63,745 bases of DNA, filler included, from Octopus bimaculoides (GCF_001194135.2; 6 parts of 5 records of this genome joined end to end with filler, not necessarily neighbours in it), one strand, 5' to 3'. Counted from the whole stretch's first letter, positions 43,050-61,583 are shown. Numbers and translations are program-made. Notes: a model not told the origin generated them from the letters alone.

Positions 43050-44061
43050 NNNNNNNNNNNNNNNNNNNNNNNNNNNNNNNNNNNNNNNNNNNNTTAATTA
43101 ATTAANNNNNNNNNNNNNNNNNNNNNNNNNNNNNNNNNNNNNNNNNNNNCCATTATTTTTTCTGTTATTTTAAAGTTAACAACTTGCTGAATCCCTATAG
43201 CGCTAGTTCGTCTGCCATTACGTTCTGAGTTCAAATGCTGCCGCGGTCGACTTTGCCTTTCATCCTTTCGGGGCAATAAATTAAGTACCAGTTTCGCACT
43301 GGAGTCGATGTAATCGACTTAATCCCTTTGTTTATCCCCTCTATGTTTAGCCCCTTGTGGGCAATAAAGAAATAAGATATACCTATACATATACACAACT
43401 ATATGATGTGTTAATAGTTGAGGTCCTAAAATCATGGTTCCCATTATGGGGTGAAAGTTTATATCAATAGTTATAATAGCAGTTGGTACTAAATTACTAA
43501 ATGAAATGCTTTAAATCTCCGGTCAATTAACAAGATACTGTATTATCCTCCATTATTTTTTCTGTTATTTTAAAGTTAACAACTTGCTGAATCCCTATAG
43601 GTAACGGGGAGGGGGTTGTGGTCATTCAAGTAATCTAATTGGTCAGCTAATTTATTTGAAAGGCCATGATGCTGCTATGGTTAGTTAGTGCTTAACAGAT
43701 AACATAAACAAACTATATAAAAATTATATATGGATGAAAGCATAGAAACAAATATGAGAGTAAAAAACTGATATCGAGACTTGATTCGATTAAATTAAAT
43801 TAAGGATTATATAAGTAAAAAGTTGATGAGTGTATATGTTAGTGGATATAATATAATAGGTTATAGCGATACGACTAGGGGATGTGGTTTTTAGATCATT
43901 TACGAGAAATAAGGTATTACAAATGTAAGAAACCGTATATTATTATAAATATTAAAACGTGTATCTGTCTAATTAGGGCGATTGAATGTGTATTTACCAA
44001 AATATATGAGCAATAGAAGGGAAATTCTATGATGGAAATTATAATTACAAATTTATTTTTT

Positions 44062-44498
44062 ATCAATGGATAAGTTATTTTCCTAACTTGTTGTTATTCA
44101 TCGTTAAAATAAGTTTATAGTATAATATACTTGATCAGACACAATACATTAAGTGCAAGGCACTATGCAATAGTGTTGAGCTGTTCAATTAATCATCGAA
44201 TCATATATTTTTTCAGACCATCCATTTATTTAGTTATTTAATTCCAATTTTACTGTTTTATTTGAGTGGGGGTACCAGCTAATAGTAGAATGTTCATATT
44301 TCACCATTTTTATTTTCATATTATTTTTAGTCCAAGGGGGACAACTCTGATTATTCATCTTTATAAATTGAATAAGTTACTGAAAACCATCAGATATTAA
44401 ACTAATCAGCTAATTAGCTAATGAATGAATCAATTAATTAATTAAATTTAATTGAATAATTATTCAATTAATTGGTTGTGTAAATCTATTTTTATCGC

Positions 44499-44568
<70 letters not shown>

Positions 44569-45905
44569 AATATACGTATGATACACACATACATAAGTAT
44601 ACACCCACATACATATACATACAGATATATATGCACATACAAATTTATGATTCAGTCTTGGGGATGGTACTAAATAATGTTATTATTCTGCATATTTGTA
44701 GGTTATAATTTGATTATTTAATTTTATTATTAAAGATGAGTTAGTCTATGCGTATTTGTTTAAGGTATATTAATAGATGAGTTACTAATGCCATTGCTTT
44801 AACCATGTTTGTGTGTATTTTATTATAATGATTATTATCATCAATATGAGCGTGGGAAAATATAGCATTTCTATAACATAATGGCGGGGTGATGGTTTTT
44901 ATATCTGTTCGTAGTCATGCTACAACCTTTTCAAATATAAGTAGAGAAATAATATATGCATAAATTAACCCTATAAACCTCTTGGACTATCTTATAAAAC
45001 TCTCTGACGATGCCCAGAGGCATACTCAAGTACCCTAATTTTATCTACAGATTTACAATATACTGAAAAGATGGAAATAACATATGGGGAACAGTGACCT
45101 CTTGGCTGAAACAGCTGTAAGAAACTGCTCTTCTTTCTCTATTCTAGAAATTACTTATACTTTACACATGTATTTATATATTATCTGAACTGTTTAAAAT
45201 AAATAAATAGATATGATATAATGTCTAACAGCTGGTAAATACTACCTCTGGATTCCCTCTATTTTCTTCTTGCTATATATATATCAACGGATAAGATATT
45301 AGAAGGGACTGGATAAGTCATTTTTCCAACTTGTTATTCATCGTTAAAATATGTTTATAGTATAATATATTTCATCAGACACAATACATTAAGTGCAAGG
45401 CGCTATGCAATAGTGTTTAGTTGTTCAATTAATCATTGAATCATTTATTGTTTTAGACCATCCATTTATTTAGTTATTTAATTTCAATTTTACTGTTTTA
45501 CTTGAGAGGGGGTACTAGCTAATAGTAGAATGTTCATATTTCACTATTTTAATTTTCATAATATTATTTTAATAGTCCAAGGGGGACAACTCTGTTTATT
45601 CATCTTTATAAATTGAAGAAGATACTAAAAAAACCATCAGATATTAAACTAATCAGCTAATTAGCTAATGAATGAATAAATAAATTAATTTAATTTAATA
45701 ATTAGTCAACTAATTGGTTGTGTAAATATGCNNNNNNNNNNNNNNNNNNNNNNNNNNNNNNNNNNNNNNNNNNNNNATATACAAATATACGTATGCATAC
45801 ACACATACATAAGTACACACACACATAGATAGAGATACAGATATATATGCACATATGATTCAGCCTTGGGGATAGTACAAAATAATGTTATTATTCTGCA
45901 TACTT
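44062..45905 (+). repeat. Pair of about 620-bp direct repeats (44062-44700 and 45285-45905) flanking a hammerhead-containing segment
   Basis: GGATAAG..CTTGTTATTCATCGTTAAAAT..CAGACACAATACATTAAGTGCAAGG..AAACTAATCAGCTAATTAGCTAATG occur in both; roughly 90% identity by eye. Confidence 0.85.
45001..45122 (+). ncRNA. Minimal type-I hammerhead ribozyme motif of Penelope-like terminal repeat, with 77-nt loop II
   Basis: Stem I TCT(45001-3)/AGA(45120-2); CTGACGA 45004-10; stem II GCCCAGAGG(45012-20)/CCTCTTGGC(45098-106), 8 of 9 pairs; GAAA 45108-11; palindromic stem III ACAGCTGT 45111-18; cleavage triplet GUA 45117-19. Confidence 0.7.
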
Positions 45906-46019
45906 GTAATGTCAATCTAATTGATGGTCTCCTTTTTCTCTTGTAGGTCAGAGGTGCTGAGGAACTCATCAGGTCTACGTGTTTCCACGTCTTCTAGTGT
46001 GTTTGTGTGTGTGTGGGGG

Positions 46020-46610
46020 GGGCACTTTAGTATTGTTTATTGAGTGCTTCACCTATCTTCTTGGGGTCTGCAGTTAGTGAGCCCTTTTCATCAAACAGTG
46101 GCCCTATCCTGTATCGCACAGAGGCAGACTCCTTTGCAAACTTGTAGAAGGCATTAGGGTTGCTTTTTATATTTTCCCCCGCTCTGGCTTCTCTGTTTAC
46201 CCTTTCTTTTTCATGGGAGAGTCTGATTTCATTCTCTGAGAATGCCATTTTGAGGAAGGGCGTTTTGCTGTCATTAGGTTCCTTATTTAAGCAATTCGAG
46301 AACTTTATCCTCCGTGTCATTAGGATTCGTCTATCTCGAGGAATAATGTTCTTGTGTGCGGTGGCTTTCTTCTCTGGGACAAACTTAATGCATATGGTTT
46401 GCATTATAGACATGAATTCATTGAATTTCATGTCACTGCTTTGCATGGACAGACTTTAAAGCCAGTTTTGCTGGAGTATCTCTTTTTTGATGGACTTCCA
46501 GTCAGACTTGTAGAAGTTCAAGTTCGCTAGCGTTTGGGATCCAGTAGTGTTGTATGATTCTTTACTTAGCTTTGGACCTTATATTTACAGTTCTATCATG
46601 TTATGGTCTG
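46020..46610 (-). mobile_element. CR1/L2-type LINE ORF2 fragment (linker between APE endonuclease and RT)
   Basis: LNFYKSDWKSIKKEI...NIKSNPNAFYKFAK...RIGPLFDEKGSLTADPKKIGEALNKQY, typical of the CR1-group inter-domain region. Confidence 0.75.
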
Positions 46611-46639
46611 AGTGGGTAGATGGTAATATGTTTATGTTG

Positions 46640-47495
46640 TGGATAAGTGCAGCTCCTCAACTCCTCTAACATGAAACCCATAACCTCGAGATATGTTGTT
46701 TACAAGAACTCGGCTTTGTCACACAACATGAAAATTAACATACTGATACAAGACTTAGTTAGGATAATGAAGAACATGTCTTCACTATGCAAACCCTACG
46801 TAACGAAGAAACATGTACAGAACTTCATGCACGGCATGCAGTTCTCTGGATATGATCAGAAAGATAGGGTTCGAGTATACAGGGGTGCTAGAAAGAAGTT
46901 GGATAACATTATATGTAATGAAACCCCAGATATAGAAGCAAAGACTGGAATAGAATACAAAGAGCTTGTGACAAAGCAAACAGGGTGAACACATGGTATA
47001 ACACTGACAAATATCAAGGAGTGATGTTTGTAGAGGCCACAGCCCATGGAGAACTAGTCCATAGATTTAGGAAAGCTCTGAAAGAGACTGAACTCAACAG
47101 TAAGATTGTTGAAAAGCCAGGGAACTCCATTAGATCACAACTATGTAGGACAATAATAACTACATGGTATGTAGGATTAGCCCTGGCATTAACTGTAGAA
47201 CTAGAGATGTAGTCTACAGCATAAGATGCATAGAAGGTGCTTGTAAAGATATGAACATGGAATACATAGGGGAGATATCTAGGAGGATAGTGGAAAGACT
47301 TTGAGACAATATGACGACACAAAACAGTCCTCCATACTCTACCAACATGCCAAAGACCAGCATGGAGGCAACCTGGGTCAACTTGACATCCGCATTTTAT
47401 CCAAGCACCCAAAGGACCCAACACTGAAACAAATACAGGAGTACGTCCTCATAAATGAAACTTCCCAAGTACTAAACAGGAAATATACGTAGTAG
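46640..47495 (+). mobile_element. Penelope-like retroelement 3' part (RT thumb, linker and GIY-YIG endonuclease), frameshifted
   Basis: MKPITSRYVVYKNSALSHNMKINILIQDLVRIMKN...MQFSGY; WYNTDKYQGVMFVEAT...KIVEKPGNSIRSQL; DVVYSIRC...EYIGEISRRIVERL; SILYQHAKDQH...LKQIQEYVLI..LNRK. Confidence 0.8.
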
Positions 47496-47718
47496 GTAAT
47501 CATACCTACATGCCCACAGTTTATATTTCTATACAGATAGAATAGTTAGTGGGATGTTATGTAGATGTATGTGTGTGTATATATGTATACGTATATGTAG
47601 CTAGGTAAATAGATATGAAAGTAAACAGATAGACATACAGACGGATAGGTACATTGGTAATATGAACAGACAAGCACACATACAAACATATACGCAAATG
47701 AAGACTAAAACACATGAC

Positions 47719-47759
<41 letters not shown>

Positions 47760-47900
47760 CACTTCACACAAGGACAATTCTTAACCATGCAGCTATGATA
47801 TAACAGTTTCCATCTACAAAATCCTCTCAAAAGTCTTTCGTCTGCCCAAAACTACAGTAGAAGACACTTGCCGAGGGTGCCATATCTACATATGTATATA

Positions 47901-48039
47901 TTAGGGTGACCTTTAGCAACAGGTAATTTTCTGAAAATTAAAATGTGGCTGCTCTGACCCCATAATCCTGTTCCAATCAATGAAAAGCTGGGGTGTGCAA
48001 AATTTCAGCTCAATCAAACAACTGCTAGGCGACCCTTAA
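47901..48039. mobile_element. Possible short MITE
   Basis: Imperfect TIRs TTAGGGTGACCT / AGGCGACCCTTAA around a GTGCAAAATTTCAGCTCAATC core. Confidence 0.3.
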
Positions 48040-49904
48040 ATGCCTTGAAGTCGGAACATACTATACGCAACAAATAATTCTGTTCAAAAGTGCTATATTG
48101 TTCCCTATCTTGACCATTTTGTGTTTTCTTAGAGAAATTTATGTGAACACATTGAGGCAACCCCAACAGATGTTTAAAAACATTCTGAATCAAATCTACC
48201 AATAGTTAATTTGAAAATTTCCTGAAATAACATGAAAATCTTAAGAAATTTTAGGTTTTCTTAAGAAAGCACACAACTTCTAAAAGAGAAATGCAAAGGA
48301 GTGTCTAAAGCTGGGAGTGTTTGACACCAGGTAAGTGAAAGCCAGAAAGGGGAGGAACAAGCAAGGGGTCTACCCTGGTGATCGGATATTTGTATATTTA
48401 ATTGCTAAATAGCAGCTACTACACCCTTTATGTTTATCTGTCCTTGTTTGTCCCCTCTTTGTAATGCCTTCATGGCAAATCGTTATGAAATAAAGTAGCT
48501 TGCTTACGAACCACATGGTTCCGGGTTCAGTCCCACTGCGTGACACATTGGGCAAGTGTCTTCTACCATAGCCTCTGGCTGACCAAAGCCTTGTGAGTAC
48601 ATTTGGTAGACAGAAAATAAAAGAAACCCGTCACACACATATATATATATATAGATATGCAGGGCAGGGAATCGTCAATTAGTAATAAAATTAATAATTA
48701 ACAATTTTGCCGGGTAGCTCAGTATGAAAAAACCTTTTCGGTAAAAAACATTTATAATCATAAATATATAGGGATTGACAGTAACCTGCTTCTCCAACAT
48801 ACTGAGAATTCAGAAATAGCAGTCAAAGAACTACTGATTTCAAAACTACAAATTATTACTCCAGATTGATAGCGATATTTTTGATACACACAGAACAAAA
48901 AACAGTAGAGAAGAGTTAAAAAACCACCTGCCTTTAGTTAATTTAGTACGATCGTTTCACAGTTAAGAGTANNNNNNNNNNNNNNNNNNNNNNNNNNNNN
49001 NNNNNNNNNNNNNNNNNNNNNNNNNNNNNNNNNNNNNNNNNNNNNNNNNNNNNNNNNNNNNNNNNNNNNNNNNNNNNNNNNNNNNNNNNNNNNNNNNNNN
49101 NNNNNNNNNNNNNNNNNNNNNNNNNNNNNNNNNNNNNNNNNNNNNNNNNNNNNNNNNNNNNNNNNNNNNNNNNNNNNNNNNNNNNNNNNNNNNNNNNNNN
49201 NNNNNNNNNNNNNNNNNNNNNNNNNNNNNNNNNNNNNNNNNNNNNNNNNNNNNNNNNNNNNNNNNNNNNNNNNNNNNNNNNNNNNNNNNNNNNNNNNNNN
49301 NNNNNNNNNNNNNNNNNNNNNNNNNNNNNNNNNNNNNNNNNNNNNNNNNNNNNNNNNNNNNNNNNNNNNNNNNNNNNNNNNNNNNNNNNNNNNNNNNNNN
49401 NNNNNNNNNNNNNNNNNNNNNNNNNNNNNNNNNNNNNNNNNNNNNNNNNNNNNNNNNNNNNNNNNNNNNNNNNNNNNNNNNNNNNNNNNNNNNNNNNNNN
49501 NNNNNNNNNNNNNNNNNNNNNNNNNNNNNNNNNNNNNNNNNNNNNNNNNNNNNNNNNNNNNNNNNNNNNNNNNNNNNNNNNNNNNNNNNNNNNNNNNNNN
49601 NNNNNNNNNNNNNNNNNNNNNNNNNNNNNNNNNNNNNNNNNNNNNNNNNNNNNNNNNNNNNNNNNNNNNNNNNTGTATGTATGTGTGTGTGTATATATTT
49701 ATGCGTCTGTGTTTGTCTCCCCAGCTTGACAACTGATGCTGGTGTGTTTACGTACCCATAACTTAGTGGTTCGGCAAAAGAGACCGAAAGAATAAGTACT
49801 AGGCTTACAAAGAATAAGTCCCGATGGCCACAGTCAAATGAATGAAACAAGTAAAAGAATATGATTTAGCTCCCAGATCTTTCCATCATGTCTGTCCTAA
49901 CCCT

Positions 49905-50535
49905 TTTGATAGCAACCTGCCCAAAACCTCCCTTGGTTCTGTGATACAAACTTCTTGATTTAAAGTGATCTAAATTAAAATCTTACATTAAAATTTCATG
50001 TTCATTTAGGTTCCAAATACCAGAATAATTAGTGACAAAGTTATTTTACTATATTTTTCAATATTTTCAAAATCACTTGAAACAAACTCGGAACATTTCA
50101 ACAGAAATATCCGTAACCTTATTCATACCAACCTACCCGAGACCACCTGTGGTTGTATGACACAAATTTCCCATTTTAAAATTATCTAAGTTTAAAATCT
50201 TCCATCAAAGTTTCATCTTCATTTATGTTCCAAGAACCTGATTAATTAATAATGACAAACTTATTTGTCAATATTCTATGATACAAACTTCCAAACACCA
50301 GCTTAATAATGACAAGGCTATTTTACTAAATTCTTCGTTATTTTTAAAATTAATTTAAACAAAAACAGCATATTTCAATAGAAATATCTTAGTCATATGT
50401 TTTGACTTCCAGACCTTTCAATCTAACCATTTTGATACCAACGTGTCAGAAACCACATCTACTTCTACAATACAAAGTTCCAAACATCAGTCTGATGATG
50501 ACAATGTTATTTTACTAAATTTTTCATTTTCAAAA
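49905..50535. repeat. Degenerate tandem copies of an AT-rich interspersed repeat
   Basis: GTTCCAAA(C/T)ACCAG..AATGACAA(A)GTTATTTTACTA recurs near 50010, 50225, 50290 and 50478. Confidence 0.6.
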
Positions 50536-50943
50536 TAAGAAAAAAGGATAAATAAAATAAAAGGCAGTTAATTACAAAAAAAAATTTGGTAAGAAAAGGG
50601 TCAACAATATAAATGTGTCTTTATTTCATAATTAAAAACATTATAATTGTTGTAAAATAGTCATCATCTCATTCTCATCCTCATTGCAATATCAGGGGGT
50701 GAGAGGAGGGGATGAGTCAATTACACTGATCCGTGTTCAACTGGTACTTATTTTAGCAATCCCAAAAGGAAGAGACGTAAAGCCAACCTTGATGGAATTT
50801 GAACTCAGAACATACTGACAGACAAAATGCCGTCAAGCATTTTGCCCCGAGCACCACCAGTTCTGGCAGCTTGCTGCCTTATAACCATTATTGATCTCGT
50901 TATCACAAATATAAACTACACTATCAAATCACTGTTGAAATTT

Positions 50944-52365
50944 TTATAGATTTTCAGCAAAAAATTCCCTGATCTTTAACCAGGACTTTTCTTGTGCTTC
51001 AGCATGTGGTCGAGGATAACCCCCAAATACAGTTGGACGGCCATACAAAGCAGTATAACAAGTGTGAAACAGAGGGGTATATGGGGGTTCCAAAAAGTGA
51101 CCCGCACCCTCATACATAATNNNNNNNNNNNNNNNNNNNNNNNNNNNNNNNNNNNNNNNNNNNNNNNNNNNNNNNNNNNNNNNNNNNNNNNNNNNNNNNN
51201 NNNNNNNNNNGGTTGGTGTTAACTTGTCAAACCAGAGGTAATAGTCACTTGTATAAACCACCTGGTCATCACCGCTAATAAGAAACAATACTTTGCTACG
51301 ACAAGTCTCATCGAAATAAAACAGTTTAGATTCATCTACTTTCCACAATGCCAATAAACTCCCATCATCTTTCACTTTAAAACTGCCATAGTCCAGAGAA
51401 GAGCTTGGAAGCTGTTTACCATTATGGCGGATGCTAAAAACAAAGAAGGCTGGCGAAGCGTTAATACTTATAACAGCGCTTACTTGTGGACACTGTTTCG
51501 CTATGTATAGAGCTATTATTCCTCCTAGAGATGTCCCTAAAACACCTATACCATTCTCACTGGAAACTTGCTCGTGGTTAATAAGCCACTCAATAGCCTC
51601 TTCGAAATATTCAAAATCAACGTCTGTGACGACTGAAGGTAAGTCTTTATAAGCAAAATAGGTCAAACTTAAAGTAATAAATCCATGGGACGCTAACAAA
51701 GCACCTCTGGATTCTATCAAAGAACCAGTGCTACCAAACAGATCTATCACAGCAGGATATCGTCGTTGTTGTCTGTTGGATGTTTCATCACTTGGTATGA
51801 ATAAACTACCCCGAAGTCTTCCGTGGTTAACTGTGATTTTACGGACACCAGATCTCATAAACGATCGTCGAACCAATTTGGTTGCTAATGGCTTTATATC
51901 AGAAGTAAACTCAGAATGCTGTGAGATATGACCAGGGTGGACCATCACAGTGCAATCCAAAGTTTTGGTGGCATCATGAGTCCTAATTCTACCATGTTTT
52001 CCAACTACTTGAGTCATACTCGAAAATAATCCCATGGGATCAATTCCAGTGTAAGTTCCCGCTAAACATGGATCAGTGACCAGATTAACACATTCGTCAA
52101 CTGAAGCATTGAAATCTCCGAAAGACCTGAAAACGGATTCTCTTTTCTTTGAGCTCTGTTCCATTGTGGCACTGACTGTGACATTTTCTTCAGGTTTCAA
52201 ACCAGAAACACTCACAGACAATTGCTCATCAACCAAACCATTTTCTGGATTCACTGTTACCGAAACTGGGCAGCGGGTTGAAACTAGCACTCTGGATAAG
52301 ACTGTTGGCTAGCTGGGTATGTGACGTAGAGCAGAGAGTAGTTGGTAGGATGGACGGAGGATCAT
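50944..52365 (-). pseudogene. ACOT: Second ACOT/BAAT-family copy with premature TAG at codon 19 (52311-52309); ORF open from GTG 52290 or ATG 52164 to TAA 50946-50944
   Basis: Reverse complement of the + copy with the same ATG context at 52365. AGC-TAG-CCA here versus AGC-TAC-CCA in the + copy. Triad motifs GTSLGG / ISGDDQ / GAGHFLEPPY are intact. The 90-N gap (51121-51210) corresponds to 21 bp in the other copy. Family call is strong; pseudogene status is uncertain. Confidence 0.65.
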
Positions 52366-52393
52366 CTTTCTCGGTCAGTGTATACTTGCAGGA

Positions 52394-52407
52394 CTGCAGA
52401 AAAAAAA
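52394..52407 (-). promoter_or_regulatory. 3' splice acceptor of the - strand ACOT copy
   Basis: TTTTTTTTCTGCAG| on the - strand, 28 nt upstream of ATG 52365. Confidence 0.6.
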
Positions 52408-55199
52408 TTAATAAATAAAATGGGTTGTTTTTAGATAAAAATTCAAGGTGAGACAAGCAGATTTTGTTAATAAAACAGTGACTTTAATTACCATAAGAAT
52501 TAATTAGATGTAGGCTTAGATGTAATGATTATATAAATAATAACACAGGTGAAGCTGTTTGGACCTGTCAAGCCAGGTGTAAACATAATCATAGCTGATG
52601 CTGGTGTCACGTAACTGGCACATGTGCCGGTGGCATGTAAAAAGCACCTTTTGAGCATTGGGCCTTCTGGAGGCAATGTGGCCGAAGCCAGTGGTATGTA
52701 AAAAAGCAGCTTTTGAGTATTGGGTGTCACACAGGCAATGGCAAATGAGTGAGACCTTTAGTTATATGCTGTGATTGAGAAGAAGACCCATCAAGCCAAG
52801 TGAAATCATAGCTGTAGCAGATACTGGTGTAATGCAACTGGCATTCGTACCAGTGGAACGTAAAAGCACCCGTTACACTCTTGGAGTGGTTGGCATCAGT
52901 AATGGCATCCAGCTGTAGAAACCATGCCAAATCAAACTAGAGTTTGGTGCAGCCCCTCAGCATCCCAGCTCTGGTCAAACCATCCAACCCACACCAGCAT
53001 GGACAACAGACGCTAAATGATGATGAAGTCTTGAGGTTCAGTCCCACTGCATGTGTCTTCTACTATAGCAGGGTTTCGCAATCATATTTTACCTATGGAT
53101 CCCTTTCATTTCTATTTTACTAGGGGCTGGAGATAGAGAGTATTTCTAGCTAATTAATTCCGTATTGGAATAGTACTCAGTTCAGGTCTAAGGAAAGAGG
53201 TACTGCCTAAATTTATCCTTTCTGAAATAACTCCACCTGAGAACGACTATATTCACCTATCCACATGTGGCTTATTCCTCTTCTTATACCCAAATAATTT
53301 TAATAAGTTGTGCTTCACTAACATCCTCATGTTTGNNNNNNNNNNCCTCTTCTTATACCCAAATAATTTTAATAAGTTGTGCTTCACTAACATCCTCATG
53401 TTTGCTCCGATTCTTTTTACTGCCCTTTCAAAAATACAAACACTCTGTACTTGTTGTTAACAGTTTCTTATATGTATTAACCCTCTCAACCACTTAGACT
53501 CTCTGAAGAAGCCTAGAGGCACATTCATCATCCAAACTTTATCTGCCCATNNNNNNNNNNNNNNNNNNNNNNNNNNNNNNNNNNNNNNNNNNNNNNNNNN
53601 NNNNNNNNNNNNNNNNNNNNNNNNNNNNNNNNNNNNNNNNNNNNNNNNNNTAGATGGATTGGTAGATAAATAGAAAGGAAGATAGATAATTAGTAGAAGT
53701 CGCAAAGTGACTTAAGTACTGAAAGTTTCACATGCATGTACTAATTTGCATACGAGCGCATGCGCACATGTATTCATCTGCATACGCGCACTCGCACACG
53801 CACTTGTTGTAGGATCGACTACTCACGACTAGCTAGCGTGGGTGCTCGTTGGGGACCACTCTGCTTTAGTAGTACCGGAGTAATATTTACTGTATTTTAT
53901 ACTTGGAGAAAAAAATATTTTTCCCAAATGTTCACTTCATTAGAAAAACTGTATCAGCTTTTGTAAATGCATTAAAAATACTATAACATAATCTGAACAT
54001 TATTTCAGAAATAAACTCCGTTCTCTTGCAGCATATAAAAGACAAATTTAGGTGAGGCGAAATGAGGTAAGTTTGTTGCTGCAGTTCTTCAGAATTACAT
54101 TTGAAATCAGATTCATACGCATCAATATCCATCCTTACACATTCGAATTATCAGAAATGTAAGAAGAATATAAAATATCTAGAGTAAATTGAAAAAGAAT
54201 ATGAAATTAACAGAATTTGACCAAATAAAAAAATCTCAGCATAAAGTTTTCTCTGTAGCTTTTTCACGATCTTCAGTCCCATTGCATGGCATCTTGGGCA
54301 AATGTCTTCAATCGTAACCTCAGGACAACCGAAGCCTTGTGAGCGGATTTGGTAGATGGAAACTGATAGAAGCCTGTCGTGTGTGTATTTGTACATATGT
54401 GTGTGTGTCATTGTGTCTGTGTTTGTCTCGCCCATCACCAACAAAGGGACTGATAGAATAAGTAGTAGGGTTTATAAAATGAAATAATTCCTCCAAAGCA
54501 ATGCTCCAGCATGTCTACAGTCAAATGACTAAAACAAGTAAAAGAAAGAATATAGGCAAAATGAAATACCTCGTTTCAGNNNNNNNNNNNNNNNNNNNNN
54601 NNNNNNNNNNNNNNNNNNNNNNNNNNNNNNNNNNNNNNNNNNNNNNNNNNNNNNNNNNNNNNNNNNNNNNNNNNNNNNNNNNNNNNNNNNNNNNNNNNNN
54701 NNNNNNNNNNNNNNNNNNNNNNNNNNNNNNNNNNNNNNNNNNNNNNNNNNNNNNNNNNNNNNNNNNNNNNNNNNNNNNNNNNNNNNNNNNNNNNNNNNNN
54801 NNNNNNNNNNNNNNNNNNNNNNNNNNNNNNNNNNNNNNNNNNNNNNNNNNNNNNNNNNNNNNNNNNNNNNNNNNNNNNNNNNNNNNNNNNNNNNNNNNNN
54901 NNNNNNNNNNNNNNNNNNNNNNNNNNNNNNNNNNNNNNNNNGACTAAAACAAGTAAAAGAAAGAATATAGGCAAAATGAAATACCTCGTTTCAGTCAGAC
55001 TGCGATCATGTTGGAGCACTCACTGCCTTGAAGAATTTTAGTCCAACGAAATCGATCCTAGTGCTTTAAGCTTGGTGCTTATTCTATAGGTTGCTTTTCC
55101 TGAACTGCCAAGTTTCAGGGACATAAACACCCCACCAAACACACACACATATTTATATATATTAAAAGTGTGGAAGGCCGATCCATGGGATAACCTTAG

Positions 55200-55900
55200 G
55201 TTTCCCATCCATAAAGGGTTTAGGTTTATGGTATATTGTCAGATCCTTGGAGGAGGAAATACCTCACTACTCAAAGGTAACAATTGGGATCGTCTCCCTT
55301 AGCTATCAACTTCCAGCTGTGCCACCATCTTGTGGTCCCTAAAAGGCGAGCAGGAACCTCCTGAAATGTAAATGTAGTCTGTAAATCTCCATTCTGCTGT
55401 TGTTGCCGTCGGGGGAACTGCCATTGTTGTTAATGTTGTTAACTGTGGCGAGGGTGGCGGCGTTGCTGGTTCTGGTCCCATATCTATGGCTGCTACTGTT
55501 TCTACCAGTGGTATTGCAAGGGCTTGCTAGTACTTTGGCTTCCTAGACAACCCCTTTGATTTCGTAGTGCTCCTCCCCCACCGTGCATCTGTTGAAATCC
55601 ATGCATGAACATCCTGCCTCTAGCCATGGCCTATGGGCACTAACTACAATGCTCTTAATATTGGGGACACAGCTAAAAGAGACTCTAACATTGTACCTGT
55701 TGAAAATGGGCCCGTACCAATGGGAGCTGGTGAAATGCTTATCTATTAATTTAAGGAATATTCTACCTACAGGCATTTTTGTGTTAAGAGAGAGAGGAGG
55801 TTGCAAACCAAATGGTATTTCTGTGATGCTTCCTTCTGTGGCTGTTGGGTTTCCGGCATGTAGGAGGTGTGGTCCCTAAATCCACTGGCAGCTAGAGTCT
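55200..55900 (-). mobile_element. Degenerate Penelope-like element (post-RT linker and start of GIY-YIG) in the spacer of the inverted duplication
   Basis: RNTIWF/QPPLSLNTKMPVGRIFLKLIDKHF...IFNRYNVRVSFSCVPNIKSIV...CSC...KGVV, equivalent to the PLE WFNPP..GK.FL.L.DKHF..IFNRN..K.SYSC.PN block, with a frameshift. Confidence 0.75.
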
Positions 55901-55959
55901 TGTTATAGTAAGGGGCTGCTGCTTAAAATTAGTCTCAATTTCCTGCAAGACTCTCTCTA

Positions 55960-56019
<60 letters not shown>

Positions 56020-57740
56020 TTCTAGTAATCCAGTAGTACTCATAAAAAAGCTCCTTAATGTGTCATTCTACAAAACCTAGAATAAATAGTATGATACAAA
56101 AGAAAACCGTGTTTATATATATAGCCATTAAGAAAATGGAGAGGATACAAAAACGACATACATCAGCAAGTAGACATTCTAGTATGTCTCTTTATTCCAA
56201 AGTTATTAGAAGAATACATACACATGTAATAACAATTGTNNNNNNNNNNNNNNNNNNNNNNNNNNNNNNNNNNNNNNNNNNNNNNNNNNNNNNNNNNNNN
56301 NNNNNNNNNNNNNNNNNNNNNNNNNNNNNNNNNNNNNNNNNNNNNNNNNNNNNNNNNNNNNNNNNNNNNNNNNNNNNNNNNNNNNNNNNNNNNNNNNNNN
56401 NNNNNNNNNNNNNNNNNNNNNNNNNNNNNNNNNNNNNNNNNNNNNNNNNNNNNNNNNNNNNNNNNNNNNNNNNNNNNNNNNNNNNNNNNNNNNNNNNNNN
56501 NNNNNNNNNNNNNNNNNNNNNNNNNNNNNNNNNNNNNNNNNNNNNNNNNNNNNNNNNNNNNNNNNNNNNNNNNNNNNNNNNNNNNNNNNNNNNNNNNNNN
56601 NNNNNNNNNNNNNNNNNNNNNNNNNNNNNNNNNNNNNNNNNNNNNNNNNNNNNNNNNNNNNNNNNNNNNNNNNNNNNNNNNNNNNNNNNNNNNNNNNNNN
56701 NNNNNNNNNNNNNNNNNNNNNNNNNNNNNNNNNNNNNNNNNNNNNCATATAAGAAACTGTTAACAACAAGTACAAAGTGTTTGTATTTTTGAAAGGGCAG
56801 TAAAAAGAATCGGAGCAAACATGAGGATGTTAGTGAAGCACAACTTATTAAAATTATTTGGGTATAAGAAGAGGAATAAGCCACATGTGGATAGGTGAAT
56901 ATAGTCGTTCTCAGAAGGAGTTAGTTCAGGAAGGATGAATTTAGGCAGTACTTCTTTCCTTAGACCTGAAATGAGTACCATTCCAATGCGGAATTAATTA
57001 GCTAGAAATACTCTCTATCTCCAGCCCCTTGTAAAATAGAAATGAAAGGGATCCATAGGTAAAATATGATTGCGAAACCCTGCTATAGTAGAAGACACAT
57101 GCAGTGGGACTGAACCTCAAGACTTCATCATCATTTAGCGTCTGTTGTCCATGCTGGTGTGGGTTGGATGGTTTGACCAGAGCTGGGATGCTGAGGGGCT
57201 GCACCAAACTCTAGTTTGATTTGGCATGGTTTCTACAGCTGGATGCCCTCCATGATGCCAACCACTCCAAGAGTGTAACGGGTGCTTTTACGTTCCACTG
57301 GCACGAATGCCAGTTGCATTACACCAGTATCTGCTACAGCTATGATTTCACTTGGCTTGATGGGTCTTCTTCTCAATCACAGCATATAACTAAAGGTCTC
57401 ACTCATTTGCCATTGCCTGTGTGACACCCAATACTCAAAAGCTGCTTTTTTACATACCACTGGCTTCGGCCACATTGCCTCCAGAAGGCCCAATGCTCAA
57501 AAGGTGCTTTTTACATGCCACCGGCACATGTGCCAGTTACGTGACACCAGCATCAGCTATGACTATGTTTACACCTGGCTTGACAGGTCCAAACAGCTTC
57601 ACCTGTGTTATTATTTATATAATCATTACATCTGAGCCTACATCTAATTAATTCTTATGGTAGTTAAAGTCACTGTTTTATTAACAAAATCTGCTTGTCT
57701 CAACCTTGAGTTCTTATCTAAAACCCATTTTATTTATTAA

Positions 57741-57754
57741 TTTTTCTTCTGCAG
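57741..57754 (+). promoter_or_regulatory. 3' splice acceptor of a 5'-UTR intron, 28 nt upstream of the ACOT ATG
   Basis: TTTTTCTTCTGCAG| polypyrimidine tract plus CAG; conserved in the other copy. Confidence 0.65.
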
Positions 57755-57782
57755 TCCTCAAAGTATACACTGACCAAGAAAG

Positions 57783-59340
57783 ATGATCCTCCGTCCATCC
57801 TACCAACTACTCTCTGCTCTACGTCACATACCCAGCTACCCAACAGTCTTACCCAGAGTGCTAGTTTCAACCCGCTGCCCAGTTTCGGTAACAGTGAATC
57901 CAGAAAATGGTTTGGNNNNNNNNNNNNNNNNNNNNNNNNNNNNNNNNNNNNNNNNNNNNNNNNNNNNNNNNNNNNNNNNNNNNNNNNNNNNNNNNNNNNN
58001 NNNNNNNNNNNNNNNNNNNNNNNNNNNNNNNNNNNNNNNNNNNNNNNNNNNNNNNNNNNNNNNNNNNNNNNNNNNNNNNNNNNNNNNNNNNNNNNNNNNN
58101 NNNNNNNNNNNNNNNNNNNNNNNNNNNNNNNNNNNNNNNNNNNNNNNNNNNNNNNNNNNNNNNNNNNNNNNNNNNNNNNNNNNNNNNNNNNNNNNNNNNN
58201 NNNNNNNNNNNNNNNNNNNNNNNNNNNNNNNNNNNNNNNNNNNNNNNNNNNNNNNNNNNNNNNNNNNNNNNNNNNNNNNNNNNNNNNNNNNNNNNNNNNN
58301 NNNNNNNNNNNNNNNNNNNNNNNNNNNNNNNNNNNNNNNNNNNNNNNNNNNNNNNNNNNNNNNNNNNNNNNNNNNNNNNNNNNNNNNNNNNNNNNNNNNN
58401 NNNNNNNNNNNNNNNNNNNNNNNNNNNNNNNNNNNNNNNNNNNNNNNNNNNNNNNNNNNNNNNNNNNNNNNNNNNNNNNNNNNNNNNNNNNNNNNNNNNN
58501 NNNNNNNNNNNNNNNNNNNNNNNNNNNNNNNNNNNNNNNNNNNNNNNNNNNNNNNNNNNNNNNNNNNNNNNNNNNNNCAGACAACGACGACGATATCCTG
58601 CTGTGATAGATCTGTTTGGTAGCACTGGTTCTTTGATAGAATCCAGAGGTGCTTTGTTAGCATCCCATGGATTTATTACTTTAAGTTTGGCTTATTTTGG
58701 TTATAAAGACTTACCTTCAGTCATCACCGAGGTTGATTTTGAATATTTCGAAGAGGCTATTGAGTGGTTTATTAACCACGAGCAAGTTTCCAGTGAGAAT
58801 GGTATAGGTGTTTTAGGAACATCTCTAGGAGGAATAATAGCTCTATACATAGTGAAACAGTGTCCACAAGTAAGCGCTGTTATAAGTATTAACGCTTCGC
58901 CAGCCTTCTTTGTTTTTAGCATCCGCCATAATGGTAAACAGCTTCCAAGCTCTTCTCTGGACTATGGCAGTTTTAAAGTGAAAGATGATGGGAGTTTATT
59001 GGCATTGTGGAAAGTAGATGAATCTAAACTGTTTTATTTCGATGAGACTTGTCGTAGCAAAGTATTGTTTCTTATTAGCGGTGATGACCAGGTGGTTTAT
59101 ACAAGTGACTATTACCTCTGGTTTGACAAGTTAACACCAACCAAGAGAAAAGATGTTGAATTTATTATGTATGAGGGTGCAGGTCACCTTTTGGAACCCC
59201 CATACACCCCTCTGTTTCACACTTGTTATACTGCTTTGTATGGCCGTCCAACGGTATTTGGGGGTTATCCTCGACCACATGCTGAAGCACAAGAAAAGTC
59301 CTGGTTAAAGATAAGGGAATTTTTTGCTGAAAATCTATAA
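57783..59340 (+). CDS. ACOT: Type-I acyl-CoA thioesterase / BAAT-family enzyme, single coding exon, about 450 aa after correcting the 662-N gap (457 bp in the other copy), with predicted mitochondrial presequence
   Basis: ATG at 57783 follows an in-frame TGA. N-terminus MILRPSYQLLSALRHIPSYPTVLPRVLVSTRC is R/S/L-rich with no acidic residues. Family motifs YPAVIDLFGSTGSLIESRGALLASHGF, nucleophile elbow GTSLGG (Ser codon 58822-58824), LFLISGDDQ (Asp) and YEGAGHLLEPPY (His). TAA ends at 59340; C-terminus FFAENL has no PTS1. 57916-58577 is N, so that part is unverified and no specific paralog is assignable. Confidence 0.9.
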
Positions 59341-59699
59341 AAATTTCAACAGTGATTTGATAGTGTAGTTTATATTTGTGATAACGAGATCAATAATGGT
59401 TATAAGGCAGCAAGCTGTCAGAACTGGTAGTGCTCGAGGCAAAATGCTTGACGGCATTTTGTCTGTCAGTATGTTCTGAGTTCAAATTCCATCAAGGTTG
59501 GCTTTACGTCTCTTCCTTTTGGTATTGCTAAAATAAGTACCAGTTGAAACACGGATCAGTGTAATTGACTCATCCCCTCCTCTCATCGTCTGATATTGCT
59601 GGCCTTGTACCAAAGATTGAAATCGATATTAATGATTGCAATGAGGATGAGAATCAGATGATGACTATTTTACAACAATTATAATGTTTTTAATTATGA

Positions 59700-59705
59700 A
59701 ATAAA
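59700..59705 (+). terminator. Candidate polyadenylation signal for the + ACOT copy
   Basis: AATAAA about 360 nt after the stop, followed by T-rich sequence; mirrored at 50620-50625 on the - strand. Confidence 0.4.
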
Positions 59706-59928
59706 GACACATTTATATTGTTGACTCTTTTCTTACCAAATTTATTTTTGTAATTAACTGCCTTTTATTTTATTTCTCTTCTTTTTTATTTTGAAAATGA
59801 AGAATTTAGTAAAATAACATTGTCATCANNNNNNNNNNNNNNNNNNNNNNNNNNNNNNNNNNNNNNNNNNNNTTAATTAATTAANNNNNNNNNNNNNNNN
59901 NNNNNNNNNNNNNNNNNNNNNNNNNNNN

Positions 59929-59971
<43 letters not shown>

Positions 59972-61538
59972 CTTTTACTAGTTTCAGTCGTTTGACTTGA
60001 CTGCGGCCATGCTGGGGTACCGCCGTGAAGAATTTTTCGTCGTATGAATCAACCCGTGTACTGTTTTTGTCGAGCCTAGTATTTATTCTAACCGTCTCTC
60101 TTGCCGAACTGCCAAGTTATGGGGACGTAAACACACCAACACTTGTAGTCAAGCAGTATTGGTGGTGGGGTGGGGGGACAAACACAAAGGCAGGTACACA
60201 CACATACACAACGGGCTTCTTTCAATTCCCGTCTACCACATCCACTCACAAGTGTTTGATCGGTCCGGTGCTATAGTAGAAGACAGTTGTGCAAGGTGCC
60301 ATATAGCAGGACTGAACCTAAATGTCCGACAAAACATTTTGCTGTATTCTTCTTTGTTTCGGTTTGGTTCTGTGTTCAAATCCCGTACAGGCTAGCTACA
60401 GCTTTCATTATTTCGAAGATAGAAGTCGGTGAAATGGCAGAATCGTTAGCACGTCGACCAAAATGCATTTCGTCAGTTTTTCTTTTTTTCATGTTTTGAG
60501 TTCAAATTTCGCCCAGCTCGATTTTGCCTTTCATCCATTTGGAATCGTTCAATCAAGTACCAGTCAAGTGCTGGTTTCGATGTGATTGACTGTCTCCATC
60601 CCCACAAATTCCAGGCCTTGTACCTAAAGTAGAAAAGATTATTTCGAGGACGAAATATAACACCAGTTCTATCAAGTTTTAACGTTCATCGTATTAATTT
60701 AAATCCACACCTTACAAGCGCTGGCCTTGTGCTACTACGCTAAGTTTTTCCACGAACCTTCTCTTTCAGAAAAGCCTTTGAATGGGCGGAAGTGTGTATG
60801 AATGCATGTATATGTATGTTTGTGCGTATATGTGTGTATATGTATGTATGTGTGTTTGTGTGCGCGCGCGTTTGTATGAGAGTAAAATTAGTTAACGGTA
60901 GATAGTGAAAGTAGGAGAGACAGGCAAAATTGAGAGGATAGAAAGACAGGTGAATGGATCAAAATGGAAGAAATTATGGAGAAGGCGAACTGGAAGCGTG
61001 GAATAAAATGAAAGAAGAGAGAGAGAGAGAGGGAGAGAGAGAGAGAGGGAGAGAGAGGGAGAGGGAGAGAGAGAGAGAGAAGATGAATAATGAACTAATA
61101 AAATGCAGAACGATATATATATACATATACATACATATATATATNNNNNNNNNNNNNNNNNNNNNNNNNNNNNNNNNNNNNNNNNNNNNNNNNNNNNNNN
61201 NNNNNNNNNNNNNNNNNNNNNNNNNNNNNNNNNNNNNNNNNNNNNNNNNNNNNNNNNNNNNNNNNNNNNNNNNNNNNNNNNNNNNNNNNNNNNNNNNNNN
61301 NNNNNNNNNNNNNNNNNNNNNNNNNNNNNNNNNNNNNNNNNNNNNNNNNNNNNNNNNNNNNNNNNNNNNNNNNNNNNNNNNNNNNNNNNNNNNNNNNNNN
61401 NNNNNNNNNNNNNNNNNNNNNNNNNNNNNNNNNNNNNNNNNNNNNNNNNNNNNNNNNNNNNNNNNNNNNNNNNNNNNNNNNNNNNNNNNNNNNNNNNNNN
61501 NNNNNNNNNNNNNNNNNNNNNNNNNNNNNNNNNNNNNN

Positions 61539-61583
<45 letters not shown>

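What the first reader, a model, noticed from the sequence alone, without database searches (positions are those of the whole stretch)
50496..59828. Head-to-head palindromic duplication of an ACOT/BAAT-family gene
Two arms of about 3 kb or more are reverse complements around a spacer of about 3.3 kb, each carrying the whole coding exon, acceptor, 3' UTR and the same old SINEs, so the duplication postdates those SINEs. By-eye alignment gives 18 differences in 875 comparable CDS nt (about 2.1%); in the 742-nt 3' part 8 are synonymous and 8 non-synonymous. Mammalian type-I ACOTs also arose by local duplication (ACOT1 cytosolic, ACOT2 mitochondrial), so an independent cephalopod duplication touching the targeting peptide would be a convergent case. 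Caveat: an inverted mis-join of two haplotypes would look similar.
Basis: partly seen in the sequence, partly recalled or inferred. Interest (0 to 1): 0.7.

Follow-up and report, generated by a model that had tools for sequence, protein, structure and literature searches.

The report
Inverted duplicate octopus ACOT-like gene
Octopus bimaculoides probably has a real, lineage-specific inverted copy of one acyl-CoA thioesterase/BAAT-family gene, but the locus is full of assembly gaps, one copy has an early stop codon, and nothing shows that the two proteins are sent to different compartments, so this is an ordinary gene-family duplication.

Summary
The inverted repeat is real in the assembly. Arms 50496-53474 and 56746-59828 differ by 57 substitutions in 2417 aligned nt (2.36%) plus 5 indels.

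The window is Octopus bimaculoides GCA_001194135.2, CM046630.1, the 2015 short-read assembly re-scaffolded with Hi-C. Every visible edge of the right arm is a gap edge, and the left arm runs into a 100-N gap 76 nt past its inner end. The 3.3-kb spacer and the inner junctions are therefore never seen in continuous sequence.

A haplotype mis-join is unlikely:
- Arm divergence is about 30 times the published heterozygosity (0.08%).
- Mirror homology continues to 43725 / 63153 and ends at a sharp junction in gap-free sequence.
- O. vulgaris anchors place the right copy between the left copy and its ancestral upstream DNA.
- A third partial copy exists.
- O. vulgaris (long-read assembly) has one copy.

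The left copy has TAG at codon 19 where all relatives have Tyr. The right copy has 152 codons hidden in a gap. The claimed ACOT1/ACOT2-like retargeting is not supported. Low interest.

The parts
50496..53474 (-).
   Evidence: Inverted match to 56746-59828, 97-99% per block. Built from three contigs separated by a 90-N gap and a spurious 10-N gap.
56746..59828 (+). Right arm (R), inner core. It consists of two contigs (56746-57915, 58578-59828), and every end of them is a gap edge
   Evidence: A 506-N gap lies before it, a 662-N gap inside it and a 1023-N gap after it (59829-60851 in L002).
43725..50495 (-). Outer part of the left arm: 3' flank whose mirror copy lies beyond the piece (window-equivalent 60852-63153). 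It includes an L-only stretch of about 2.6 kb (45732-48235)
   Evidence: 48236-48587/61202-60852 at 94.6%; 44577-45650/62243-61198 at 91.7%; 43725-44510/63153-62340 at 89.3%. The homology ends sharply at 43725/63153 in gap-free sequence.
50944..52365 (-). L coding exon (ATG at 52365-52363, TAA at 50946-50944) for a type-I ACOT/BAAT-like protein. A 90-N gap stands in for 21 nt
   Evidence: Pfam BAAT_C 7.8e-44 and Bile_Hydr_Trans 1e-24. Human ACOT2 structure 3HLK at E 4.5e-57.
52309..52311 (-). Premature TAG at codon 19 of the L copy. R and five of the six related octopus genes compared read TAC (Tyr); OvulC reads TGC (Cys)
   Evidence: It lies more than 1 kb from any contig end.
57783..57915 (+). 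R coding exon, first 44 codons, open, with Tyr at codon 19
58578..59340 (+). R coding exon, last 253 codons plus the stop codon, open. About 152 codons between the two R parts are hidden in the 662-N gap
   Evidence: The frame fits a true gap of 457 nt, as in L.
52394..52395 (-). AG of the conserved polypyrimidine-CAG acceptor 31 nt upstream of the L ATG
   Evidence: It is conserved in all seven octopus paralogs and orthologs aligned.
57753..57754 (+). The same acceptor AG upstream of the R ATG
51520..51537 (-). GTSLGG nucleophile elbow (Ser) of L. The Asp motif SGDDQ is at 51262-51276 and the His motif GAGH at 51097-51108
   Evidence: These align with GISKGG, GQDDH and ETGH of ACOT2.
58816..58833 (+). 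GTSLGG nucleophile elbow of R. SGDDQ is at 59077-59091 and GAGH at 59176-59187
53475..56745 (.). Assembly 'spacer': 2303 real bases (2250 after removing a 53-nt artificial overlap) and 968 N. It is not joined to either arm by continuous sequence
   Evidence: It has no unique match to the O. vulgaris locus, only a SINE-like repeat at 54272-54428.
53551..53650 (.). The only gap of exactly 100 N in 28 kb. It is probably the Hi-C/HiRise join between two 2015 shotgun scaffolds, so L and R sit on different original scaffolds
   Evidence: HiRise plus Juicebox were run on the old shotgun assembly with no gap closing. Other 100-N gaps occur in the same cluster. That 100 N marks a HiRise join is my own knowledge, not tested here.
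50720..50847 (.). SINE-like interspersed repeat in the L 3' flank. The mirrored copy in R is at 59438-59570
   Evidence: up to 15 copies in 125 kb of other octopus loci. Also present at the orthologous O. vulgaris site. ARAGORN calls no tRNA.
52853..53026 (.). Second interspersed repeat, upstream of L. The mirrored copy in R is at 57125-57313

Best explanation
This is a real inverted segmental duplication specific to the O. bimaculoides lineage. The duplicated unit is one member (type A) of a local cluster of type-I acyl-CoA thioesterase/BAAT-like genes, seen through a gappy short-read assembly.

The ancestral locus, as in O. vulgaris, had one type-A gene. After the split from the O. vulgaris lineage, a unit was copied in reverse orientation into the gene's own upstream region. 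That unit held the upstream intron end, the single coding exon and several kb of 3' flank. The split is put at about 34 My. The arm divergence relative to the ortholog suggests the duplication is roughly 6-15 My old, if rates are clock-like and there has been no gene conversion.

The arms then diverged by point changes, a 40-nt deletion in L, an L-only stretch of about 2.6 kb and transposable-element insertions. A third truncated copy of the 3' flank shows that more than one rearrangement step took place.

The left copy acquired a nonsense codon in the N-terminal presequence and is most likely a young pseudogene. The right copy is open where it can be read and is probably the working gene, with the Ser-Asp-His hydrolase triad intact.

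Shown: two distinct copies, their mirrored order over several separately assembled contigs, the outer junction, the single copy in O. vulgaris and the stop codon. Inferred: the adjacency and orientation across the gaps, the age, and which copy functions.
For: Source and assembly history.

Divergence against heterozygosity: arms differ by 2.36% against 0.08% heterozygosity for this species (PMC7656900).

Mirrored collinearity: it holds over four separate right-side contigs (56746-57915, 58578-59828, 60852-62246, 62340 onward) against left 53474 down to 43725.

Outer junction: homology ends sharply at 43725/63153 within gap-free sequence on both sides. The right side continues with a tRNA-like SINE head.

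Synteny anchors: the gap-free contig from 62340 to 69340 holds the mirrored flank together with the unique orthologs of O. vulgaris DNA 7-10 kb upstream of its type-A gene. These are L003 2523-2777 at 92.6% and L003 209-826 at 88.3%. They lie in the orientation of the left gene. The right copy is therefore nested between the left copy and its ancestral upstream region.

Single copy in O. vulgaris: the gap-free ONT-based locus has one type-A copy within +-10 kb.

Independent lineages: L and R are equidistant from the ortholog in every block (K2P; dS 0.21-0.26 versus 0.041 between L and R). Each has private derived substitutions.

Stop codon. Family and triad.
Against: No continuous sequence links either arm to the spacer. 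All right-arm contig ends are gap edges.

L and R lie on either side of a 100-N gap that is probably a Hi-C join, where the orientation of small scaffolds is error-prone.

The third copy of the 3' flank (window-equivalent 65839-66940) overlaps the right arm's end by 270 nt at only 96% identity. A simple two-arm palindrome does not describe the locus, and contigs from several paralogous copies may have been mis-ordered.

Read depth and spanning reads could not be examined.

The cluster's layout differs between O. vulgaris, O. sinensis and O. bimaculoides, so synteny arguments carry some risk.

The stop codon could be a base-call error. Whether R is intact is unknown for 152 codons.
Confidence: 0.65

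Rival explanations
1. There are two real paralogous copies, but the assembly gives the wrong relative orientation or position. The true arrangement would be tandem, or a larger multi-copy array whose contigs were mis-ordered by mate-pair and Hi-C scaffolding, so there is no palindrome as such.
For: Every inner boundary is a gap. The 100-N gap lies between the L and R scaffolds. Spurious gaps with 59- and 53-nt exact overlaps show imprecise scaffolding here. A third partial copy shows there are more than two copies of part of the unit. The neighbouring paralog ObimB is cut by a 100-N join.
Against: Four separately assembled right-side contigs are all in consistent mirrored order and orientation. 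One gap-free 7-kb contig holds direct-orientation flank copies next to inverted-orientation O. vulgaris upstream anchors, which is an inversion junction independent of scaffolding. The given order and orientation of the two scaffolds reproduce O. vulgaris synteny.
Confidence: 0.22
2. Assembly artefact: the right arm is the other haplotype of a single-copy gene, possibly within a heterozygous inversion or a very divergent allele, joined in reverse next to its allele.
For: Split haplotypes are described as a common artefact in the companion squid assembly. The right-arm contigs are bounded by gaps.
Against: Divergence of 2.4% in the core and 5-8% (K2P) in the outer blocks is 30-100 times the genome-wide heterozygosity of 0.08%. 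Homology ends at a sharp junction in gap-free sequence, and the 350 nt of unique left sequence beyond it are absent from 6 kb of right-side sequence. The arms differ by kilobase-scale indels. Three, not two, distinct versions of the 3' flank exist, each with private changes.
Confidence: 0.07
3. Both copies function and have partitioned location or expression. The left copy would bypass its stop, by A-to-I editing of UAG to UGG or by another start, giving a differently targeted isoform.
For: dN/dS between L and R is 0.33. Synonymous changes are in excess over neutral expectation (8 of 17, binomial p = 0.025), so at least one copy has been constrained. The rest of the L frame is open over the readable codons. 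That cephalopods recode heavily by A-to-I editing is my own knowledge.
Against: The nonsense codon is the only clear functional difference. The next ATG is codon 67, inside the Bile_Hydr_Trans domain (residues 46-180). There are no expression data. The constraint signal is explained equally well by selection on R alone. The presequence is otherwise conserved in all paralogs.
Confidence: 0.05

Closest known systems
Vertebrate type-I acyl-CoA thioesterases (ACOT1/2/4/6) and BAAT (Pfam Bile_Hydr_Trans + BAAT_C)
   Same: It has the same two-domain architecture. Full-length sequence matches to the solved human ACOT2 and ACOT4 structures give E 4.5e-57 and 3.5e-52. The GxSxG Ser, the Asp and the His of the triad align. 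The family is also prone to local duplication and loss in mammals (PMC6934887).
   Different: Identity to human ACOT2 and ACOT4 is low: the best non-cephalopod relatives in the protein search reached only 28-46%, and the human chains match by E-value, not by close identity. The nucleophile is Ser, as in ACOTs, not the Cys of human BAAT. The C-terminus is -ENL, not a PTS1 tripeptide. Substrate and location are unknown. The RefSeq name 'acyl-CoA amino acid N-acyltransferase 1-like' is automatic.
Mammalian ACOT1 (cytosolic) / ACOT2 (mitochondrial) duplicate pair
   Same: It is a recent local duplicate of a type-I ACOT-like gene, with differences in the N-terminal presequence region.
   Different: In the mammalian pair both genes are intact, and one has a targeting extension that the other lacks (my own knowledge). 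Here the difference is a nonsense codon that leaves no usable start before codon 67. The arrangement is also inverted rather than tandem.
Inverted segmental duplications / palindromes with arm-to-arm gene conversion (for example primate sex-chromosome palindromes)
   Same: Two inverted arms carry a gene and face each other across a spacer. Gene conversion is active in this gene family.
   Different: Arm identity is only 89-98%, against more than 99.9% in classic palindromes (my own knowledge). The arms differ by large indels. The arm-spacer junctions are unsequenced. There is no direct evidence of arm-to-arm conversion.
Other members of the same octopus cluster (O. bimaculoides P0002/XP_014776508.1 and P0008/XP_014788622.1; O. 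vulgaris CAI9744364, CAI9744367, CAI9744160)
   Same: All have the same single coding exon, the same conserved acceptor 31 nt upstream of the ATG and the same presequence. L and R are co-orthologs of O. vulgaris CAI9744364 (91% protein identity).
   Different: O. vulgaris has one type-A gene where O. bimaculoides has two.

Membership tests
Type-I ACOT / BAAT family | N-terminal Bile_Hydr_Trans domain plus C-terminal BAAT_C alpha/beta-hydrolase domain | tested here: met
   PF04775 at 1e-24 (residues 46-180) and PF08840 at 7.8e-44 (residues 249-450), both above the curated cut-offs.
Type-I ACOT / BAAT family | Catalytic triad: nucleophile (Ser or Cys) in a GxS/CxG elbow, plus Asp and His | tested here: met
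   GTSLGG, SGDDQ and GAGH align with GISKGG, GQDDH and ETGH of human ACOT2 3HLK. They are present in both L and R. The BAAT triad Cys/Ser235-Asp328-His362 is as given in PMC6934887.
Type-I ACOT / BAAT family | Acyl-CoA thioesterase or N-acyltransferase activity | not testable with these tools
   This needs an enzyme assay.
ACOT1/ACOT2-type pair (duplicates that differ in targeting) | Both duplicates have intact reading frames | tested here: not met
   L has TAG at codon 19. R is open in 297 readable codons, but 152 codons lie in a gap.
ACOT1/ACOT2-type pair (duplicates that differ in targeting) | One copy has, and the other lacks, a functional N-terminal targeting peptide while keeping the whole catalytic protein | tested here: not met
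   After the stop, the next in-frame ATG of L is codon 67, inside the N-terminal domain. The first 29 residues are basic, free of acidic residues and conserved in all paralogs. No targeting predictor was available, so a mitochondrial role is only inferred.
Inverted segmental duplication (palindrome) | Two arms in reverse-complement orientation with identity far above chance | tested here: met
   2417 aligned nt at 97.6% in the core, with mirrored homology out to 43725/63153.
Inverted segmental duplication (palindrome) | Arm-spacer junctions seen in continuous sequence | tested here: not met
   The right arm starts at the edge of the 506-N gap. The left arm enters a 100-N gap after 76 more bases.
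Inverted segmental duplication (palindrome) | Outer duplication junction in continuous sequence, as opposed to alleles whose homology would continue | tested here: met
   Homology is lost sharply at left 43725 / right 63153 within gap-free contigs.
Inverted segmental duplication (palindrome) | Each arm at full diploid read depth, with reads spanning the junctions | not testable with these tools
   No read data were available. No Logan contigs of this species carry these proteins.

The most novel reading that the evidence does not exclude
The locus may be a true palindrome inside a gene cluster that undergoes domain-specific concerted evolution. The 5' 750 nt (presequence plus N-terminal domain) are homogenised among paralogs within each species, while the hydrolase domains diverge. 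In this reading the left copy's UAG at codon 19 is not a death mark. It would be recoded to UGG by cephalopod A-to-I editing, or otherwise bypassed, giving a conditionally expressed second isoform.
Probability: 0.04. Interest if true: 0.5.

Novelty: new member of a known kind. Interest (0 to 1): 0.2.

Why it matters
If the arrangement is confirmed, it adds one young, lineage-specific inverted duplicate to an octopus cluster of acyl-CoA thioesterase-like genes. One copy is apparently already disabled. That would be a small, datable example of birth-and-death evolution in a lipid-metabolism family known to duplicate locally in vertebrates.

Its practical value is mostly as a caution. In this Hi-C-rescaffolded short-read assembly, paralog clusters are broken into small contigs, so apparent palindromes, spacers and truncated gene models need long-read confirmation before they are interpreted. 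The analysis does not open a new question and does not support convergent retargeting.

Tried and rejected
- Chance: rejected outright, given 2.4 kb at 97.6% identity.
- The piece edge at 59828 as a true arm end: rejected. Locus L002 shows a 1023-N gap there, with mirror homology beyond it.
- Third fragment (65839-66940) as the sequence missing from that gap: rejected. It differs from the right arm by about 4% in the 270-nt overlap and has private changes.
- Third fragment's left boundary as another copy of the same SINE (recombination between SINEs): no support.
- Outer-arm identity of 89-92% as proof of arm-to-arm conversion in the core: not supported. Those segments also evolve faster between species. 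The L-R/ortholog ratio rises only from 0.18-0.46 to 0.53-0.62, and the internal duplication of the outer element confounds it.
- tRNA scan of the piece to type the SINEs: no calls.
- Pfam on the two transposable-element-like ORFs (46027-46446 minus strand; L002 19269-19826): no hits at E <= 0.01.
- Albertin et al. 2015 could not be read. The heterozygosity figure comes from a citing paper.
- Literature on cephalopod ACOT duplications: nothing found.
- Transcripts or read-level contigs of O. bimaculoides for either copy: none in the protein collection beyond the assembly's own models and the 2015 model A0A0L8HDY0 of the left copy.


Full report
WHERE THE SEQUENCE COMES FROM

The two gene models encoded in the piece (P0005 and P0006) are found only on CM046630.1, a 10.08-Mb chromosome of Octopus bimaculoides assembly GCA_001194135.2. 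A window coordinate equals the record coordinate minus 1,170,103.

That assembly is the 2015 Illumina shotgun assembly re-scaffolded with Hi-C, using HiRise and then Juicebox. The authors state that they did not try to improve the shotgun assembly or close gaps (PMC9068888 and its supplement). The piece is not a whole scaffold. A 1936-N gap lies before 43150 and a 1023-N gap after 59828. Loci L001 and L002 gave me the region from window-equivalent 41214 to 69340.

THE OBSERVATION

The inverted repeat is real. Four collinear blocks between 50496-53474 and 56746-59828 give 2360 matches, 57 substitutions and 5 indels, or 2.36% divergence.

Each arm holds the single coding exon of a protein with Bile_Hydr_Trans and BAAT_C domains:
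- The left copy (L) is on the minus strand, ATG at 52365 and TAA at 50944.
- The right copy (R) is on the plus strand, at 57783-57915 and 58578-59340.
- Their 5' ends face each other.

A polypyrimidine tract and CAG lie 31 nt upstream of the ATG. They are conserved in both arms and in all five other octopus genes aligned, which fits a splice acceptor. Two interspersed SINE-like repeats sit at mirrored positions, 50720-50847/59438-59570 and 52853-53026/57125-57313. One of them is also at the orthologous O. vulgaris site, so the duplication did postdate them.

THE GAPS

- The 90-N gap in L corresponds to 21 nt (KRKDVEF) in R and is in frame either way.
- The 662-N gap in R corresponds to 457 nt in L. 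The two readable parts of R are in one frame only if the true length is 457, not 662. About 152 codons of R are unread.
- The 10-N gap (53336-53345) and the 362-N gap (54580-54941) are spurious. Their flanks repeat 59 nt and 53 nt exactly, and R is continuous across the first.
- The 100-N gap (53551-53650) and the 506-N gap (56240-56745) cannot be bridged.

As a result, the right arm begins exactly at a gap edge, and the left arm runs into the 100-N gap 76 nt beyond its last aligned base. Neither arm-spacer junction has been sequenced.

The 100-N gap is the only one of that exact size in 28 kb. Other 100-N gaps cut the neighbouring paralog. From my own knowledge of HiRise output I take it as a Hi-C join of two 2015 scaffolds. 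L and R would then sit on different original scaffolds.

THE STRUCTURE IS LARGER AND MORE COMPLEX THAN DESCRIBED

Beyond the 1023-N gap the mirror homology resumes:
- 60852-61202 matches 48587-48236 at 94.6%.
- 61198-62243 matches 45650-44577 at 91.7%.
- 62340-63153 matches 44510-43725 at 89.3%.

The arms as assembled are therefore about 9.7 kb on the left (43725-53474) and about 6.4 kb on the right (56746-63153). The left arm has about 2.6 kb that the right arm lacks. Homology ends abruptly at 43725/63153 inside gap-free sequence on both sides, and the right side continues with a tRNA-like SINE head.

Further right, at 65839-66940, lies a third, truncated copy of the 3' flank, in the same gap-free contig. 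It starts about 220 nt after the position of the stop codon and has the same orientation as R. It is roughly equidistant from L and R and carries private changes. At least two rearrangement steps are therefore needed to explain the locus.

HAPLOTYPES OR PARALOGS

O. bimaculoides heterozygosity is reported as 0.08% (PMC7656900). The arms differ by 2.4% in the core and by 5-8% (K2P) in the outer blocks. They also differ by indels of tens to thousands of bases.

Homology ends at a junction in continuous sequence. Alleles would stay homologous beyond it, yet the 350 nt of unique left sequence past the junction are absent from the next 6 kb on the right. There are also three versions of part of the unit.

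L and R are equally distant from the O. vulgaris ortholog in every block. Each carries derived changes when polarised with that ortholog: L has one nonsense, four non-synonymous and two synonymous changes, and R has five non-synonymous and four synonymous. I consider an allelic mis-join unlikely, at about 7%.

ORIENTATION AND PLACE

The O. vulgaris assembly is ONT-based and the fetched locus has no gaps. It holds a single type-A gene within +-10 kb. Its downstream flank is collinear with the left flank of L.

Two unique segments 7-10 kb upstream of the O. vulgaris gene are L003 2523-2777 and L003 209-826. They have their only strong matches at window-equivalent 67256-68177, at 92.6% and 88.3%, in the orientation of L. 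These anchors lie in the same gap-free contig as the mirrored outer flank and the third fragment.

Two conclusions follow. The order and orientation of the two scaffolds reproduce O. vulgaris synteny. The R unit is nested, reversed, between L and L's ancestral upstream DNA, which is what a local inverted duplication would leave.

This argument assumes synteny. The cluster layout differs among the three Octopus assemblies, and contig order within the right scaffold rests on mate pairs I cannot see. I therefore keep about 22% for 'two real copies, wrong arrangement'.

AGE

L versus R gives dS 0.041. Either copy versus O. vulgaris gives dS 0.21-0.26. K2P ratios of L-R to ortholog are 0.18-0.46 in the core and 0.53-0.62 in the outer repeats. 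With a split at about 34 My (PMC10700109), the duplication is roughly 6-15 My old if rates are clock-like. Gene conversion, which is active in this family (see below), would make this an underestimate.

WHAT THE GENES ARE AND WHAT STATE THEY ARE IN

The protein matches human ACOT2 (3HLK, E 4.5e-57) and ACOT4 (3K2I, E 3.5e-52) over its full length. GTSLGG, SGDDQ and GAGH align to the Ser, Asp and His of the triad in both copies. The nucleophile is Ser, as in thioesterases, rather than the Cys of human BAAT (triad as given in PMC6934887).

About 29-45 residues precede the conserved fold. They are basic, lack acidic residues and are conserved in all paralogs, which suggests a mitochondrial presequence. 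This is an inference only, because no predictor was available. The C-terminus -ENL is not a PTS1.

L has TAG at codon 19 (52311-52309), where R and five of the six related genes have TAC; the sixth, OvulC, has TGC (Cys). The next in-frame ATG is codon 67, inside the N-terminal domain, and both the 2015 and the current gene models of L start there. The simplest reading is a young pseudogene, or a base error.

dN/dS between L and R is 0.33, with a mild excess of synonymous changes (p = 0.025). That is compatible with constraint on one copy only. Nothing supports an ACOT1/ACOT2-like split of targeting.

COMPARISON AND VERDICT

Local duplication, loss and Ser/Cys switching are well known in this family in mammals. 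The octopus genes are already annotated in RefSeq and UniProt. I found no paper on this particular duplicate, but my searches were few and narrow.

I file it as a new member of a known kind: a probably real, lineage-specific inverted duplicate with one disabled copy, in a poorly assembled paralog cluster. Interest is low. The decisive tests are read depth, spanning long reads and copy-specific RNA-seq, none of which I could run.

Noticed in passing
window 50944-52365 compared with L003, L004, L005, L007, L008 coding exons: Concerted evolution limited to the 5' half of the gene. In the first 750 nt of CDS the paralogs group by species (O. bimaculoides A vs C 96-97%; O. vulgaris A vs B 94-99.6%). 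In the last 600 nt they group by orthology (A vs A 91.5-93.8%; A vs C 73-85%). This points to gene conversion among cluster members over the presequence and N-terminal domain. A run of three adjacent L-specific codon states (246-248) shows two matches to ObimC (246-247); at codon 248 L differs from ObimC.
   Followed up: partly
L002 21778-22879 (window-equivalent 65839-66940): A third, truncated copy of the gene's 3' flank. It starts about 220 nt after the stop-codon position, has the orientation of the right arm, and is directly followed by the orthologs of O. vulgaris far-upstream DNA. It is equidistant from L and R and has private changes. Its origin is unexplained.
   Followed up: partly
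window 53277-53335 = 53346-53404; 54527-54579 = 54942-54994; 43150-43200 = 43550-43600: Exact duplicates of 59, 53 and 51 nt. The first two flank N gaps (10 N and 362 N), so those gaps are really unmerged contig overlaps. The third has no gap between its copies.
   Followed up: partly
window 44067-44485 and 45310-45727: Direct repeats of about 420 nt (90% identical) flanking a long (TA)n tract. The mirrored right flank also has two copies (61198-61564 and 62443-62812, 93.5%). O. vulgaris has one copy at the syntenic site (L003 16264-16742), so this small tandem duplication predates the inverted one.
   Followed up: partly
window 46027-46446 (minus strand): A 139-aa ORF inside the left-arm-only 2.6-kb stretch. 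By eye it resembles the region upstream of the reverse-transcriptase domain of non-LTR retrotransposons. Pfam gave no hit at E <= 0.01.
   Followed up: partly
L002 19269-19826 (window-equivalent 63330-63887): A 185-aa ORF just outside the right arm's outer junction. By eye it resembles a decayed Tc1/mariner-type transposase. Pfam gave no hit. A tRNA-like SINE head starts exactly at the junction.
   Followed up: partly
L006 9832-9931 and 16377-16476: The neighbouring paralog ObimB (P0008, 282 aa) is truncated at its 5' end by a gap of exactly 100 N, and another 100-N gap lies 6.4 kb further on. The original scaffolds in this cluster were very small, so Hi-C placement there is fragile.
   Followed up: no
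L007 8634-9971 and 14352-14751 (O. sinensis VCDQ01005828.1): In O. sinensis, a 66-kb unplaced contig holds a type-C gene followed 4.4 kb downstream, in tandem, by only the first 400 nt or so of a type-A-like copy. The RefSeq model XP_036356228.1 reads that part in another frame and joins it to distant exons. In O. vulgaris, A and C are 68 kb apart and head to head.
   Followed up: no
L005 (O. vulgaris OX597843.1 11265-12605): The O. vulgaris type-B gene sits 11 kb from the start of the chromosome record, 9 Mb from types A and C. Even so, it is 99.6% identical to type A over the first 300 coding nt. This means either long-range conversion or a misplaced scaffold.
   Followed up: no
window 50685/50686 versus 59600-59639: A 40-nt segment is present in R, in the third copy and in O. 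vulgaris but missing from L. It is bounded by ATTGC direct repeats, so it is a slippage-type deletion private to L.
   Followed up: yes
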